From the NCBI GenBank assembly GCA_053919585.1, contig CM132783.1: a stretch of 64,000 nt of DNA; one strand, given 5' to 3'. The notes under the pieces are model-generated. The model saw nothing but the letters and a program-made list of their open reading frames with translations, was not told the DNA's origin and did not search any database. Positions within the stretch are counted from its first letter, which is position 1; each line of letters begins with the position of its first letter. The position numbers were made by a program, and so were the translations under genes. Origin of the DNA: Euprymna scolopes. Taxonomy: Eukaryota. Positions 35,500 to 43,669 of this stretch are shown here, piece by piece.

Positions 35500-36320
35500 T
35501 GTGACATAATAAACCTAAGGGAGCAATTTGCACACATTGTGGAGCAGTAGATCCCCCAGGATCCTGAGGAGGGCCGAATAACCTGGCTAAGACCGTTTTA
35601 ATCGATCCTGGGTTTCGACAGATTTCCCAAGGAGTTAAAATAGAGAATATAAATATATATTTTATTTCATTGTCAAAATAGATATTGTTTAAAACCAGAG
35701 AAATATATTTGATGAAAGGAAACTTGGAGAATAATACTGCTAAGCCTTGGTGAACTCAAAGCCAGATGCCAGACTGATGGGTATGGCCTTGGGGGTCATG
35801 TGAGTTTGATGTATCTGTAATTCTCAGATCACAAAAATGGTGGATTTAACACCCGAAACATCTGGGGTTTCCCGATTCCGTGGCGTGATCTGATTGGCTG
35901 AGGAGATTTCCAACCCCGACCATACACCACTAGTAATACGAATTTCGCGGGGAAATTATCCAGTTTCGAAGCAGTTTCCGAAAAAATTATGCGCAAAACT
36001 CGCGGTAACCCGGCGTTCCCTGGTGAGGTGCAGTTTCCTCATCCGCCGCCGCCCGTCTGGCACTGTCTGTAAAAAAGATTTGACACTTGAAAAACTTACA
36101 AAGAACTGAACGATATTTGTAAAAACATTTTACATAAGTTTGTGAAGTAATTCTGTAGATTAGAGTTCACGTGTCTGTTATTGTTTCTTCCGACGGCTTC
36201 GATATTCGCTTTCAGCATGCATGATTCACTGTAACAACTATCAGAGAAGGTCCATACGAACCGAGCCGAGTTTCTAGACAAAAAGGGGTCCTAGCCGAGC
36301 TACACTAGCCTGGATTTACA
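35500..36320 (+). repeat. 5' LTR (821 bp)
   Basis: Starts tgtgac and ends tttaca; aligns along its full length with 42851-43669 at roughly 80% identity by eye. Confidence 0.9.
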
Positions 36321-36538
36321 TTATTGGTTTCCATTTGACCATGGTAGACGCTGTTTAGTAACCACGAAAAAGAGAGTTTTTTTGTTATCACGAACACAAA
36401 ACAAACACAGAGAAGAAAACACAAAGAGTATTTCCACGGCGAACGCAGGAGAAAAGACGTAATAAGAAAGAGACAGGCAGACAGAGACATTTGATATCAT
36501 AAATGCGTAGGGTGATTTAATTGAATTAACGAGAAACT

Positions 36539-37900
36539 ATGGTGGATTTGGATGTCAAGGGAGTCACAGGGGGGCGCGTATTAAAAGCTGGGGACAGGTG
36601 CGGATGGTTAAGGGACACTTACGGATAGCGATATTCCTATGCGGTGGATAGGCAATATGCATGGAGAATAGAACAGAGTTTGGGGTCGCCTAAGGTTACG
36701 GAGGCGTTTCGAGCCCTGGTTGGAAATTTAAGAATCCCGAGTTTCTGAGGGGGACGCGCGTGACTTGGATGACTGGCTTAAAGCGGTGGGGAAAAGGCAG
36801 ATACCTTTAAGTTTAGGAGGTTCGGAAATGGTGTTTCTTACGTACGAAGTCGCATCTGGAAGCCTGTAAAGATTCATCGGTAGACACGTCCAGGAGAACC
36901 CCAGCTTACCTGGCCACAGCTAAGGGTAGCATTGGTAAAGAATTTAGCAGCGAAAGGACGGCCGTCCGAGAATTATTAAGGCGTCGACAGCGGACTGAAG
37001 AGGAAATAAATAGTTTGGCCGAGAGGGTGTCCGAATTCGCGATAAGAGCTTTTTCCGGATCAGTCAGTCAGGGAAGGTGGACCGATTAAGGTCCTGTTGG
37101 TTGACGTAATGGGCGAGGCTATTCTTGATAGAGATATACAGTCCAACGTGTTGAAGTGTAACCCCATTAAACTAAGTAGGGCAGTAGAACTTGCGCAAAC
37201 CAGTGATCGTATTCGGGGGCGTATTAGGAGTTTGAGATTATTGAAGGAACGTTGGGGGGCCCCTACCCCTAGGAGAACGCCGAGGCCAAAGCGGGGAAGA
37301 GAGGTTAAACAACCCCGTGAGATAGTCGAGGAAGATTGAGACAAGGAAACTGACCACAAATTCTTGGAGTGCGAATTTCGATATGCTCACTAAAAACCCT
37401 ACCTAGAAGGTTAGGGTAATTATGATGGTCATCGGGCGGCGGATTGTCCGACCAAATGGGGAGATAACCCGTGGGACCTGCAGTCATACTGCCGCAAATG
37501 TAATCGACATGAACACGAGACTAAATGGTGTACCAAAGCGGCTGAACGTCACTTGGGAAAGGGCCGTTATGTTTGGCCAGAGCGACGACCTCCACCCGAG
37601 GGTAGATCAAAACGGGAGGCTACGCCTCAAAAGATGGGTGAGCAAGTCGCTCGCGCACATACTCTCTTTGCGCCGGTTTTGGGAAACGCAAATGGGTCGC
37701 CCAAGATATGAGGGCGTCGGCGACCCCGTGCGTATCAAGGCACGCGTGTTGCTGGACGTGTGGTCGAGCTGGTCAAATGGCCAGAAGCTGCTGGATGGTG
37801 GGAACACTGGTCACAGGAGGTTGGAATGTTCTCAAGGAAGAAAGAGGTTTCCAGGGCAGGGGAGAGGCCGCCACCCTAGAGAGGTCACGACGGATAGGCT
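36539..37900 (+). pseudogene. gag: gag (capsid plus nucleocapsid), frameshifted and with stops
   Basis: Capsid-like motifs: IPSF*GDARDLDDWL, LTWPQLRVAL, LLRRRQRTEEEINSLAERV and NPIKLSRAVELA. Intact CX2CX4HX4C knuckle CRKCNRHEHETKWC at 37490-37531, plus degenerate knuckles. Confidence 0.85.
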
Positions 37901-37989
37901 GTCGATGGGCGAAGAGTGGTTATTATCAGAAACAATGCAGGGGTGGTCGAGAAGACAAAAGACGCCACTTAAGGTGCGTCAATTACTGA

Positions 37990-41956: not shown

Positions 41957-42840
41957 AGACGACTTGAAGACGTTCTTTTCTTTTCTTTTCTCTCTGTTTT
42001 ACCCCCAAATTCTTGTAGGGCGCTGTGCTGAGAACCGTCGAAAGAATATCTCAACGATACCTTGAATGACCGTCTATTGAGGTGAGAAGTCCTCAGTGAA
42101 AGATATTCTTACAAGATGGTTATAAAGGAAATTGGAACTCTAAAGTAAAAGTTGTAGGTTGAACTACGCCAGCTTAAAGTGAGATGGTTTCATCTAGCTT
42201 AATAAAAAGCGGGTCCTTTGAGAACCCTGATTAGGGCTGCATACCCTTTATTATGAGATTGTACTGTTGATAGCAGGCAAGTGAAAAATACTTGAAAAAA
42301 AATCTTGTAAATTGTGACTGACTCTCTGTGAAAAACTAAAATTGAACTATGATTGAATTGATGAAAAAAATGGGAAAAGGGGAATAAGTCTTATTAACCC
42401 TGGAAAAAGAAAGGGGGCAAAACTTTTAACAAGGAAAGTACCATTTTATGAGCTAATTGATAAAATTGTACATTTTACTGAGTGACAATTTTAAATGATT
42501 ATTATCTTATCATTGAATTATAAATGTGAATTGAAAAGAATAGAATACGCGAAAAAAAAACATTCATGTGAAAAAAAGAAACTAGCACTGACGAACTTAA
42601 AACTTTTACATTTTTCTGATCTTTTGAACTTTTTGGAATAGACTTTTTTATGCACTTTTTAATGAAAAAGGGGGAAAATCCTGATTGAAGGGTGGACAAT
42701 AGATTGTGCATATGTTATCTTCTTGACGGATAATTTTATGAATGAGAGAGGGAAAAAAAACAGTCGGCGAACTGTGAAAAGGGATGAAGCGGTGTGTTGA
42801 GGAATACGATTCCATTGGTTCTAAAATGCAATATAGTCTT

Positions 42841-42850
42841 ATGGGGCGAA
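42841..42850 (+). other. Polypurine tract (degenerate)
   Basis: atggggcgaa immediately before the 3' LTR tgtgac. Confidence 0.6.
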
Positions 42851-43669
42851 TGTGACGTACTCAACCTGAGGGAGCATTTTGCTTTCATTGGGGAGCTGTA
42901 GATCCCCTCATGGGCTTGAGGGGGTCCGAATAACTAGGCTAAGACCGTTTTAATCGATCCTGGGTAGCGAAGGATTTCCCGAGGAGTTGAAATAGAGAAT
43001 ATAAATATATAGTTTATTCATTGTCAAAACAGATATGGTTTGAAATCAAACAAATATATTTTGAAGTTAAAATTGATGACAGGAAACTTGGAGCATAATA
43101 CTGTCCGGCTTTGGTGAAATCAAATCACGACTGACAGGGATGCCCTTGTGAGTCATGTGACTTTGATGTATATGTTTTTCTCAGATCACAAAAATGGTGG
43201 ATTTTACACCCGAAAAATTTTGGGTTTCCCAGATTTCGTGGTGTGATCTGATTGACTGAGGAGACTTCCAACCCCGATTACCATTAATACGAATGTCGCG
43301 CGGAAATTATCCAGTTTTGAAGCAGTTTCCGAAAGAGTTGTGCTCGAAAGTCGAGGTCACCCGCCGTTCCCTGGAGAGGTGACTCTTCCTCCTCCTTTTC
43401 CGCCCGTCTGACACTGTCTGTGAAAAAAGATTTGAGACTTGAAAAACATACAAAGAACTGAACGATATTTTTAAAAACATTGTACATAAGTTTCTGAATA
43501 AATTCTGTAGAATAGAGTTCACGTGTCTGTTTTTCCCGTCTGCGGCTTCGATATTCTTGTTCAGCATACAGGATTCAATGTAACAACTCTCAGAAAAGAA
43601 GCAGACCATCCCAACCGAATTTCCAGACAAAAAGGGGTCTTAGCCGAGCTTTACCTGAGTGGGCTCACA
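42851..43669 (+). repeat. 3' LTR (819 bp)
   Basis: Starts tgtgac, ends ctcaca; AATAAA at 43497-43502; homologous to 35500-36320. Confidence 0.9.

What the first reader, a model, noticed from the sequence alone, without database searches (positions are those of the whole stretch)
35500..43669. Enveloped LTR element with gag + protease + F-type env but no RT/RNaseH/integrase: candidate structural half of a split or helper-dependent retrovirus-like system
Seen: both LTRs, a PPT, gag with CCHC knuckles, a DTGA protease and a near full-length env. The protease frame ends by ~38500. The ~1.55 kb up to env shows no YxDD, RNase H, HHCC/DDE or GPY/F motif in the frames I read, and is shorter than a typical RT-RH-IN region. 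Known: Ty3/gypsy elements normally run gag-PR-RT-RH-IN(-env), and non-autonomous copies usually lose env rather than pol. Inference: intact ends and an apparent TSD show the element was integrated by LTR machinery. It either lost pol afterwards or belongs to a family supplying only virion functions (capsid, maturation protease, fusogen) while RT/IN come in trans from a partner sharing its LTR/PBS.
Basis: partly seen in the sequence, partly recalled or inferred. Interest (0 to 1): 0.85.

Follow-up and report, generated by a model that had tools for sequence, protein, structure and literature searches.

The report
Dead pol-less enveloped LTR retroelement copy
This is one old, broken copy of an envelope-carrying Ty3/gypsy-type retroelement that has lost its reverse transcriptase and integrase, which is an ordinary kind of defective copy and shows no sign of being half of a two-part virus-like system.

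Summary
Window 35500-43669 is an LTR-bounded element with two ~820-bp LTRs that are 83.8% identical. It carries decayed gag (CCHC), a decayed aspartic protease (DTGA) and a decayed env that is colinear and near full-length with its relatives. No trace of RT, RNase H or integrase was found by Pfam, tblastn or a family pol profile. The env belongs to the F-type (Baculo_F / pneumovirus-F fold) clade carried by Ty3/gypsy 'errantivirus-like' elements of molluscs and other invertebrates.

Homology to relatives' pol stops just after the protease. About 1.65 kb of non-coding, unmatched sequence sits where about 3.6 kb of RT-RH-IN should be. All three genes are broken at least 5, 3 and 10 times, so the copy is long dead.

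Seven of the eight relatives' element copies whose layout could be read in DNA are complete gag-pol-env. The eighth, a young Haliotis copy (L006), is pol-less with an intact env, near-identical LTRs and its own target-site duplication. Pol-less, env-bearing derivatives therefore arise sporadically and are copied in trans.

No second copy of the window's own family could be found. Whether pol was lost before or after integration is therefore open, and nothing supports a dedicated 'structural half' family. Low interest.

The parts
35494..35499 (.). Candidate target-site duplication, 5' side (TTTATG), abutting the 5' LTR
   Evidence: Direct reading. The same hexamer recurs at 43671-43676.
35500..36320 (+). 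5' LTR (821 bp, TGTGAC...TTACA)
   Evidence: Direct repeat with 42851-43669. 83.8% identity, K2P 0.18.
36321..36629 (+). Leader with a PBS-like site (TGG at 36325, 4 nt after the LTR)
   Evidence: Direct reading. The tRNA partner could not be tested: no tRNA gene in the window or in the loci.
36630..37800 (+). gag, broken (at least 5 stops/frame changes). Capsid-like part plus a nucleocapsid with one complete and one partial CCHC knuckle.
   Evidence: tblastn with gag of four relatives, E down to 8.5e-10, colinear in 3 frames. Gag profile positions 51-287. CCHC motif. Weak zf-CCHC. Lesion count. The start is extrapolated from relatives' residue 40 at 36747.
37900..38382 (+). Aspartic protease, broken (at least 3 stops/frame changes). 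The LVDTGA active-site motif is at 38046-38063.
   Evidence: Motif. Relatives' pol residues 35-53 and 97-172 match here (E 0.36-1.6 and 0.004-0.009). The protease domain of relatives is pol residues 36-134.
38383..40029 (+). Non-coding spacer where RT-RNase H-integrase should be. No homology to anything tested.
   Evidence: No Pfam hit on either strand. No tblastn or profile hit to relatives' pol. As closed to translation as background: 15 lesions against 17.5 +/- 3.3. GC 0.39. GC skew +0.20, like the element's coding parts. No repeat elsewhere in the window.
40030..41953 (+). env, F-type class I fusion glycoprotein, broken (at least 10 stops/frame changes). It has an R-x-x-R site followed by a fusion-peptide-like segment, a long heptad helix and a C-terminal membrane anchor.
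   Evidence: The 154-aa open piece 40392-40853 has 304 relatives, 49 of them at E<=1e-10. 9 of 10 full-length relatives tested carry Pfam Baculo_F. Profile of 17 relatives: 5 pieces at E<1e-3, best 6e-38, colinear over positions 16-635 of 673. tblastn 1e-44. The model of the piece is a fusion-peptide helix plus a 110-residue helix. The model of the closest full-length relative matches pneumovirus F at E 3e-11.
41954..42850 (+). 3' untranslated region, ending in a short polypurine tract GGGGCGAA (42843-42850)
   Evidence: Direct reading. A similar ...GGGCGAA|TGT junction occurs in the Haliotis relatives. GC 0.34, GC skew +0.23.
42851..43669 (+). 3' LTR (819 bp)
43671..43676 (.). Candidate target-site duplication, 3' side (TTTATG), one base beyond the CA end of the LTR
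   Evidence: Direct reading.

Best explanation
The element is a long-dead, defective copy of an envelope-carrying Ty3/gypsy-type LTR retroelement. It belongs to the invertebrate 'errantivirus-like' clade whose env is an F-type class I fusion protein.

Its RT, RNase H and integrase were removed as one block that starts just after the protease. About 1.65 kb of non-coding sequence stands in their place.

I lean to the reading that this replacement was already present in the RNA that was copied. On that reading the copy was reverse-transcribed and integrated with enzymes supplied by an autonomous relative in the same cell. That makes it an ordinary helper-dependent deletion or recombinant derivative, like the young pol-less copy in Haliotis. 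It is not a member of a family specialised to supply virion parts. It then decayed in place.

Shown: the anatomy, the absence of RT/RH/IN, the F-type relationship, the decay, and the complete layout of relatives. Inferred: the timing of the loss and the trans-copying.
For: 1. Absence of pol is real, not decay. env is still recognised at E 1e-44 / 6e-38 and gag at 8.5e-10, while the normally better conserved RT/RH/IN give nothing (Pfam). The gap is also about 2 kb too short.
2. The loss is one clean block. Homology to pol ends at residue ~137-172, between the protease (36-134) and RVT_1 (362-521) of relatives. gag and env on either side keep nearly their whole extent.
3. The spacer shares the strand bias of the element's internal region. 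Its GC skew is +0.20, against 0.20-0.23 for gag, protease, env and the 3' UTR. The LTRs have ~0.05 and background is 0.02 +/- 0.09. So the bias is a property of the sequence, not of the locus.
4. LTR ends, PPT and a likely TSD are in place.
5. Precedent: Haliotis L006 has LTRs 99.87% identical, its own TSD (CGAG), gag residues 9-107, an ~830-nt mosaic filler, the last 45 residues of pol, and an env 100% identical to that of three full-length copies.
Against: - Only one copy is available, so a shared junction in independent insertions could not be tested.
- The copy is old (K2P 0.18), which leaves ample time for insertions and deletions in place.
- The downstream flank 43670-46000 also has GC skew +0.23. 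Such sequence therefore exists outside the element, and the composition argument is weak.
- The TSD is offset by one base.
- No autonomous partner with the same LTR was found in the window.
Confidence: 0.5

Rival explanations
1. A complete gag-pol-env element integrated by itself. It lost RT-RH-IN afterwards through deletion and/or nested insertion of unrelated sequence during its long residence in the genome. The pol-less state is then private to this locus.
For: - Old insertion: LTRs 83.8% identical with 8 gap events.
- Every gene is riddled with breaks.
- The spacer is non-coding, AT-richer than the coding parts and unmatched.
- The window is full of other retroelement debris.
- Seven of the eight relatives' element copies read in DNA carry pol, as does P0004's locus by its gene list.
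Against: - Random decay would not be expected to remove exactly the 3.6-kb enzymatic block while leaving gag and env nearly full-length on both sides.
- No ends, target duplication or poly(A) of a nested element were found in the spacer.
- The spacer's strand bias matches the element's.
Confidence: 0.4
2. A lineage that by design carries only virion functions (capsid, protease, fusogen) and relies on a partner lineage, sharing its LTR and PBS, for RT and integrase.
For: - The retained set (gag, protease, env) is coherent.
- A pol-less, env-intact copy that did transpose exists in a relative (L006).
Against: - There is no second copy, no partner and no same-family sequence anywhere.
- The copy is dead.
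- L006 has different breakpoints and also lacks most of gag and the protease. Pol-less copies therefore look like sporadic accidents of complete elements, not a conserved architecture.
- Seven of the eight relatives' element copies read in DNA are complete.
Confidence: 0.05
3. Artefact. Either pol is present but unrecognisable, or the region is an assembly chimera joining the 5' half of one copy to the 3' half of another.
For: The spacer is unexplained. N runs exist elsewhere in the window.
Against: - There is no N run inside 35500-43669.
- The gap is about 2 kb too short for pol.
- The spacer is as closed as background.
- RT/IN motifs and profiles are absent, while the less conserved env is found easily.
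Confidence: 0.03

Closest known systems
Envelope-carrying Ty3/gypsy elements of invertebrates with F-type env ('ancient errantiviruses'; Chary & Hayashi, eLife 2026, PMC13524379). Examples here: the Haliotis cracherodii copies L005/L007/L008, the two Lottia gigantea copies in L001, and the L002/L003 element.
   Same: - LTRs with TG..CA ends and a similar PPT/LTR junction.
- gag with a Ty3-type capsid and two CCHC knuckles.
- A retropepsin.
- env homologous to Baculo_F with a pneumovirus-F-like fold.
   Different: - This copy has no RT, RNase H or integrase. About 1.65 kb of unmatched non-coding sequence stands in their place.
- All genes are broken.
- Its env is at most 38% identical to any relative in the databases.
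Haliotis cracherodii pol-less copy (locus L006)
   Same: LTR-bounded, lacks RT/RH/IN, keeps env, and has unmatched or mosaic filler in place of pol.
   Different: - L006 is young (LTRs 99.87% identical), with an intact env and an exact 4-bp TSD.
- It also lacks the protease and two thirds of gag, so the breakpoints are different.
- It belongs to a different family. Its env, identical to P0012's, is 28% identical to the window's env piece.
Non-autonomous LTR elements copied in trans by autonomous relatives, such as mouse ETn with MusD, plant LARD/TRIM and BARE-2 (established knowledge; ETn/MusD reviewed in PMC6466679 and PMC2265474)
   Same: LTRs and priming sites are kept, the enzymatic genes are missing, and the internal region is partly replaced by unrelated non-coding sequence.
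   Different: - Those families are defined by many copies sharing one architecture and by a known partner. Here there is one dead copy and no partner.
- They generally lack env, whereas this copy keeps it.
Domesticated envelope genes of retroelement origin (Drosophila Iris, mammalian syncytins; established knowledge)
   Same: An env of retroelement origin that has outlived its pol.
   Different: Domesticated genes have an open frame under selection and usually no LTR pair. This env is broken at least 10 times.

Membership tests
LTR retroelement (structural definition) | Two direct long terminal repeats with TG...CA ends bounding an internal region | tested here: met
   35500-36320 and 42851-43669, 83.8% identical, TGTGAC...ACA.
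LTR retroelement (structural definition) | Target-site duplication flanking the LTR pair | tested here: inconclusive
   TTTATG is present on both sides but offset by one base at the 3' end. Relatives have exact 4-bp TSDs.
LTR retroelement (structural definition) | Primer-binding site complementary to a tRNA 3' end, and a polypurine tract | tested here: inconclusive
   TGG 4 nt after the 5' LTR, and GGGGCGAA before the 3' LTR. No tRNA sequence was available to test complementarity.
Ty3/gypsy (Metaviridae) | pol with domain order PR-RT-RH-IN and an RT of the Ty3/gypsy clade | tested here: not met
   This copy has only the protease. No RT, RH or IN was found. Relatives found through its env and gag do have that order. 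Its descent from the group is inferred from gag, protease and env homology.
Ty3/gypsy (Metaviridae) | gag with a Ty3-type capsid and CCHC nucleocapsid | tested here: met
   Homology to gag of relatives that carry Ty3_capsid/Retrotrans_gag and two zf-CCHC. CCHC motif. Pfam on the window's own pieces gives only a weak zf-CCHC.
F-type envelope (Pfam Baculo_F; paramyxo/pneumovirus-F-like class I fusion protein) | Sequence membership in Baculo_F | tested here: inconclusive
   Direct Pfam scan of the window's env pieces gives no hit. Indirectly, the piece 40392-40853 matches proteins at E down to 8e-23. 9 of 10 full-length ones tested pass the Baculo_F cut-off, and a profile of 17 such proteins matches the window at 6e-38.
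F-type envelope (Pfam Baculo_F; paramyxo/pneumovirus-F-like class I fusion protein) | F-like fold | tested here: inconclusive
   The window piece alone folds as one long helix and finds nothing in the PDB. The model of the closest full-length relative, P0004, matches pneumovirus F (E 3e-11, probability 1.00, 255 hits at E<=0.001).
F-type envelope (Pfam Baculo_F; paramyxo/pneumovirus-F-like class I fusion protein) | Basic cleavage site followed by a fusion peptide, heptad repeat and C-terminal membrane anchor | tested here: met
   R-x-x-R precedes the conserved P..G......FG segment. R6, P10, G13, F20 and G21 are invariant or nearly so among relatives. There is a 110-residue helix and a hydrophobic anchor in the last open piece.
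Non-autonomous, helper-dependent LTR family | Several independent insertions sharing the same pol-less internal architecture | not testable with these tools
   The host genome is not in any collection. No same-family protein is in 1.84 billion representatives (best 38% identity). No second copy is in the window.
Non-autonomous, helper-dependent LTR family | An autonomous partner sharing LTR and PBS | not testable with these tools
   None in the window. The RT/IN fragments at 12.7, 23.6 and 48.8 kb are on the other strand, outside the LTR pair and without this LTR.

The most novel reading that the evidence does not exclude
Pol-less, env-bearing derivatives (this copy and Haliotis L006) might not be mere accidents. 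They could be a recurrent, selectively maintained class of parasites of invertebrate env-carrying Ty3/gypsy elements. Such a class would keep capsid and/or envelope genes and borrow RT and integrase from autonomous relatives.
Probability: 0.05. Interest if true: 0.7.

Novelty: new member of a known kind. Interest (0 to 1): 0.2.

Why it matters
As it stands, this adds one decayed, pol-deleted copy to the catalogue of F-type env-carrying Ty3/gypsy elements, which are now known to be widespread in invertebrates.

The mildly useful point is comparative. In this clade, copies without RT and integrase but with env do get integrated. Haliotis L006 is such a copy and is young and env-intact. Surveys that count only intact gag-pol-env elements will therefore miss a class of defective env carriers. 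A genome-wide census would show whether that class is accidental or maintained.

Tried and rejected
- Pfam on the window's own pieces recognised nothing except a weak zinc knuckle. The pieces are too short and too decayed, and homology came out only through relatives.
- Word-index protein searches with the env piece and with the 225-aa gag/protease piece found nothing.
- PDB sequence search with the env piece gave only chance-level hits.
- Fold search with the env piece alone gave no match, because the model is a single helix.
- Rfam and tRNA scans of the window and the loci were empty, so the PBS partner is unknown.
- The bacterial promoter/terminator scan is irrelevant to a eukaryotic LTR.
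- The viral-contig scan was empty. The metagenome scan gave only two distant relatives, one of them a complete gag-pol-env.
- I tried to identify the host through the RVT_1 ORF at 12.7 kb. This gave a 91% identical but unnamed ENA protein, so the host remains unknown. The named env relatives are gastropod molluscs.
- The Lottia protein P0030 looked like a gag-env fusion without pol, but it is a gene-model artefact. Its locus has a broken pol between gag and env.
- The env-mRNA (spliced transcript) retrocopy idea was rejected because gag and the protease are retained.
- The 19-nt imperfect direct repeat bracketing the spacer was judged to be chance.
- The RT/IN fragments elsewhere in the window were rejected as a displaced pol: other strand, outside the LTRs.

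- My scripts printed the bounds of open pieces so that the pieces could be searched apart, and one search also printed their translations. The script printed a list of weak pol matches, each with its window zone and query range. The piece bounds imply where stops lie.
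Full report
**What is there**

Window 35500-43669 is bounded by two direct repeats of about 820 bp, at 35500-36320 and 42851-43669. They start TGTGAC and end ACA. They are 83.8% identical over 803 ungapped columns, with 8 gap events and a K2P distance of 0.18, so the insertion is old.

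- A short purine run, GGGGCGAA, abuts the 3' LTR. It resembles the junction in relatives from Haliotis.
- A TGG lies 4 nt after the 5' LTR.
- The hexamer TTTATG abuts the 5' LTR and recurs one base beyond the CA end of the 3' LTR. This is probably a target-site duplication blurred by a one-base change, but it is not clean.
- No other copy of the LTR or of the internal region is in the window.
- There is no N run inside the element.

**The genes, read through relatives**

Pfam recognises none of the window's own open pieces apart from a weak zinc knuckle. The longest env piece (40392-40853, 154 aa) was searched with HMMER against 1.84 billion representative proteins.

- It has 304 relatives at E<=0.001, 49 of them at E<=1e-10. 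The best is 38% identical.
- The full-length relatives are about 640-700 aa, and the query aligns at about residues 115-260.
- 9 of 10 tested pass the Pfam Baculo_F threshold.
- Named sources are the gastropods Haliotis cracherodii and Lottia gigantea.
- A model of the closest full-length relative (P0004, mean pLDDT 74) matches pneumovirus F glycoprotein structures at E 3e-11, with 255 hits at E<=0.001.
- A profile of 17 full-length relatives matches five open pieces of the window at E<1e-3 (best 6e-38). With three weaker pieces, the match is colinear over profile positions 16-635 of 673, between about 40000 and 41950.

The env piece itself shows an R-x-x-R site followed by the conserved P..G......FG segment. 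Its model is a 110-residue helix. The last env piece holds a hydrophobic anchor.

Using relatives' loci that came with DNA, gag of four relatives matches 36747-37273 and beyond, colinear in three frames, with E down to 8.5e-10. One complete CCHC motif and half of a second lie near 37450-37530. Relatives' gag has two knuckles.

LVDTGA is at 38046. Relatives' pol residues 35-53 and 97-172 match up to about 38382. That range covers the protease, which is pol residues 36-134 in relatives.

**What is missing**

In relatives, pol continues with these domains:
- RVT_1, residues 362-521
- RNase H, residues 584-721
- Integrase zinc domain, residues 856-911
- Integrase core, residues 946-1024

None of this is found in the window's element. 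The negative results come from Pfam on all open pieces on both strands of 38100-40200, tblastn with seven pol queries at permissive settings, a pol profile, and motif scans.

env, usually less conserved than RT and integrase, is still found at 1e-44. The available space is also about 2 kb too short. So pol is absent, not merely decayed.

The 1.65 kb between protease and env (38383-40029) is as closed to translation as the surrounding genome: 15 minimal lesions against 17.5 +/- 3.3 for background. It matches nothing and shows no ends of a nested element.

Its GC skew of +0.20 equals that of gag, protease, env and the 3' UTR (0.20-0.23). The LTRs have about 0.05, and background has 0.02 +/- 0.09. 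However, the downstream flank 43670-46000 has +0.23 as well, for no reason I could find.

**State of the copy**

All three genes are broken. The minimum number of stops plus frame changes needed to read through is at least 5 for gag, 3 for the protease and 10 for env. This is a dead copy.

**Relatives' architecture**

Every relative that could be inspected, except one, is a complete gag-pol-env element:
- the L002/L003/L004 element (gag 363 aa, pol 1375 aa, env 678 aa)
- P0004's locus, read from its gene list only
- Haliotis L005, L007 and L008, with LTRs 100% identical and exact 4-bp TSDs
- two adjacent Lottia copies in L001
- the metagenome contig L010

One of the closest env fragments has an integrase fragment upstream (P0002). 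Another (P0001) shows no pol hit within 10 kb, but no DNA could be fetched for it.

The Lottia protein that seemed to fuse a CCHC domain to env is a gene-model artefact spanning a broken pol.

The exception is Haliotis L006, a 5.4-kb element:
- Its LTRs are 99.87% identical and it has its own TSD (CGAG).
- It carries gag residues 9-107, then about 830 nt of mosaic filler with faint gag- and pol-N-terminal likeness, then the last 45 residues of pol.
- Its env is 100% identical in protein to that of the three full-length copies.
- It is a pol-less, env-intact copy that was integrated recently, necessarily with enzymes made elsewhere.

**Interpretation**

The firm conclusion is that this is a decayed, pol-deleted copy of an F-type env-carrying Ty3/gypsy-type element. 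That group was recently shown to be widespread in invertebrates, including molluscs (PMC13524379; that study looked only at intact elements).

Whether pol was lost before integration or afterwards in place cannot be settled from one copy. I lean slightly to loss before integration (0.5 against 0.4). On that reading it is an ordinary helper-dependent derivative, comparable to L006 and, in principle, to ETn with MusD. My reasons are:
- The loss is one clean block exactly covering the enzymatic domains.
- Both neighbouring genes keep nearly their whole extent.
- The filler shares the internal region's strand bias.

There is no second copy and no partner. Its only analogue, L006, has different breakpoints and lacks the protease and most of gag.

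**Limits**

- The host genome is not in any collection available here, and its identity is unknown.
- The closest env relative is 38% identical, so no same-family copy could be compared.
- The PBS partner tRNA could not be tested.

- Scripts printed the bounds of open pieces so that they could be searched apart, and one search also printed their translations. The script printed a list of weak pol matches, each with its window zone and query range. The piece bounds imply stop positions. They are not repeated here.

Noticed in passing
window 12741-13562 (- strand), within the GC-richer block ~10000-14000: An open 274-aa piece with a clear reverse-transcriptase domain (the 252-aa part 12738-13496: RVT_1, E 2.6e-21). 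It belongs to a different retroelement and is not hit by the gypsy-type pol of the env relatives. A 91% identical protein exists on an unnamed 10-kb ENA contig (L009), and more than 2000 relatives exist.
   Followed up: partly
window 23623-23817 (- strand): A short integrase-like remnant matching the integrase region of three gypsy-type relatives (E 0.003-0.04). It lies outside the LTR pair and on the opposite strand, so it is debris of another element.
   Followed up: partly
window 48785-49147 (- strand): An open 121-aa piece with a sub-threshold RVT_1 match (E 8e-5, 22.9 bits against a cut-off of 29.6). It is another retroelement fragment, on the opposite strand and outside the element.
   Followed up: no
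window 43670-46000: The flank immediately downstream of the 3' LTR has a strong GC skew (+0.23), like the element's interior. It has no Pfam hit on ten open pieces and no match to relatives' gag, pol or env. Its origin is unexplained.
   Followed up: partly
L006:7713-13116 (Haliotis cracherodii, JAJLRC010000030.1): A young 5.4-kb pol-less derivative of a 9.1-kb gag-pol-env element. Its LTRs are 99.87% identical, it has its own 4-bp TSD, and its env is intact and identical in protein to that of three full-length copies.
   Followed up: yes
L004 (ENA contig NODE_5, 8757 nt), compared with L002: The same element is assembled in circularly permuted order (pol C-terminus, env, gag, pol N-terminus). 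This is expected when an assembler closes a multi-copy LTR element, or a one-LTR circle, through its LTR.
   Followed up: no
L001:10001-16857 (Lottia gigantea, protein P0030 / XP_009046077.1): The annotated 1090-aa 'CCHC-type domain-containing protein' joins gag and env of a decayed element by treating the broken pol as introns. It is a gene-model artefact. Two such elements lie next to each other in this locus.
   Followed up: yes
window 9330-9514, 14190-14330, 53414-53575, 56143-56319: Four N runs (665 N in all). None is inside the element. They were left as they are.
   Followed up: no
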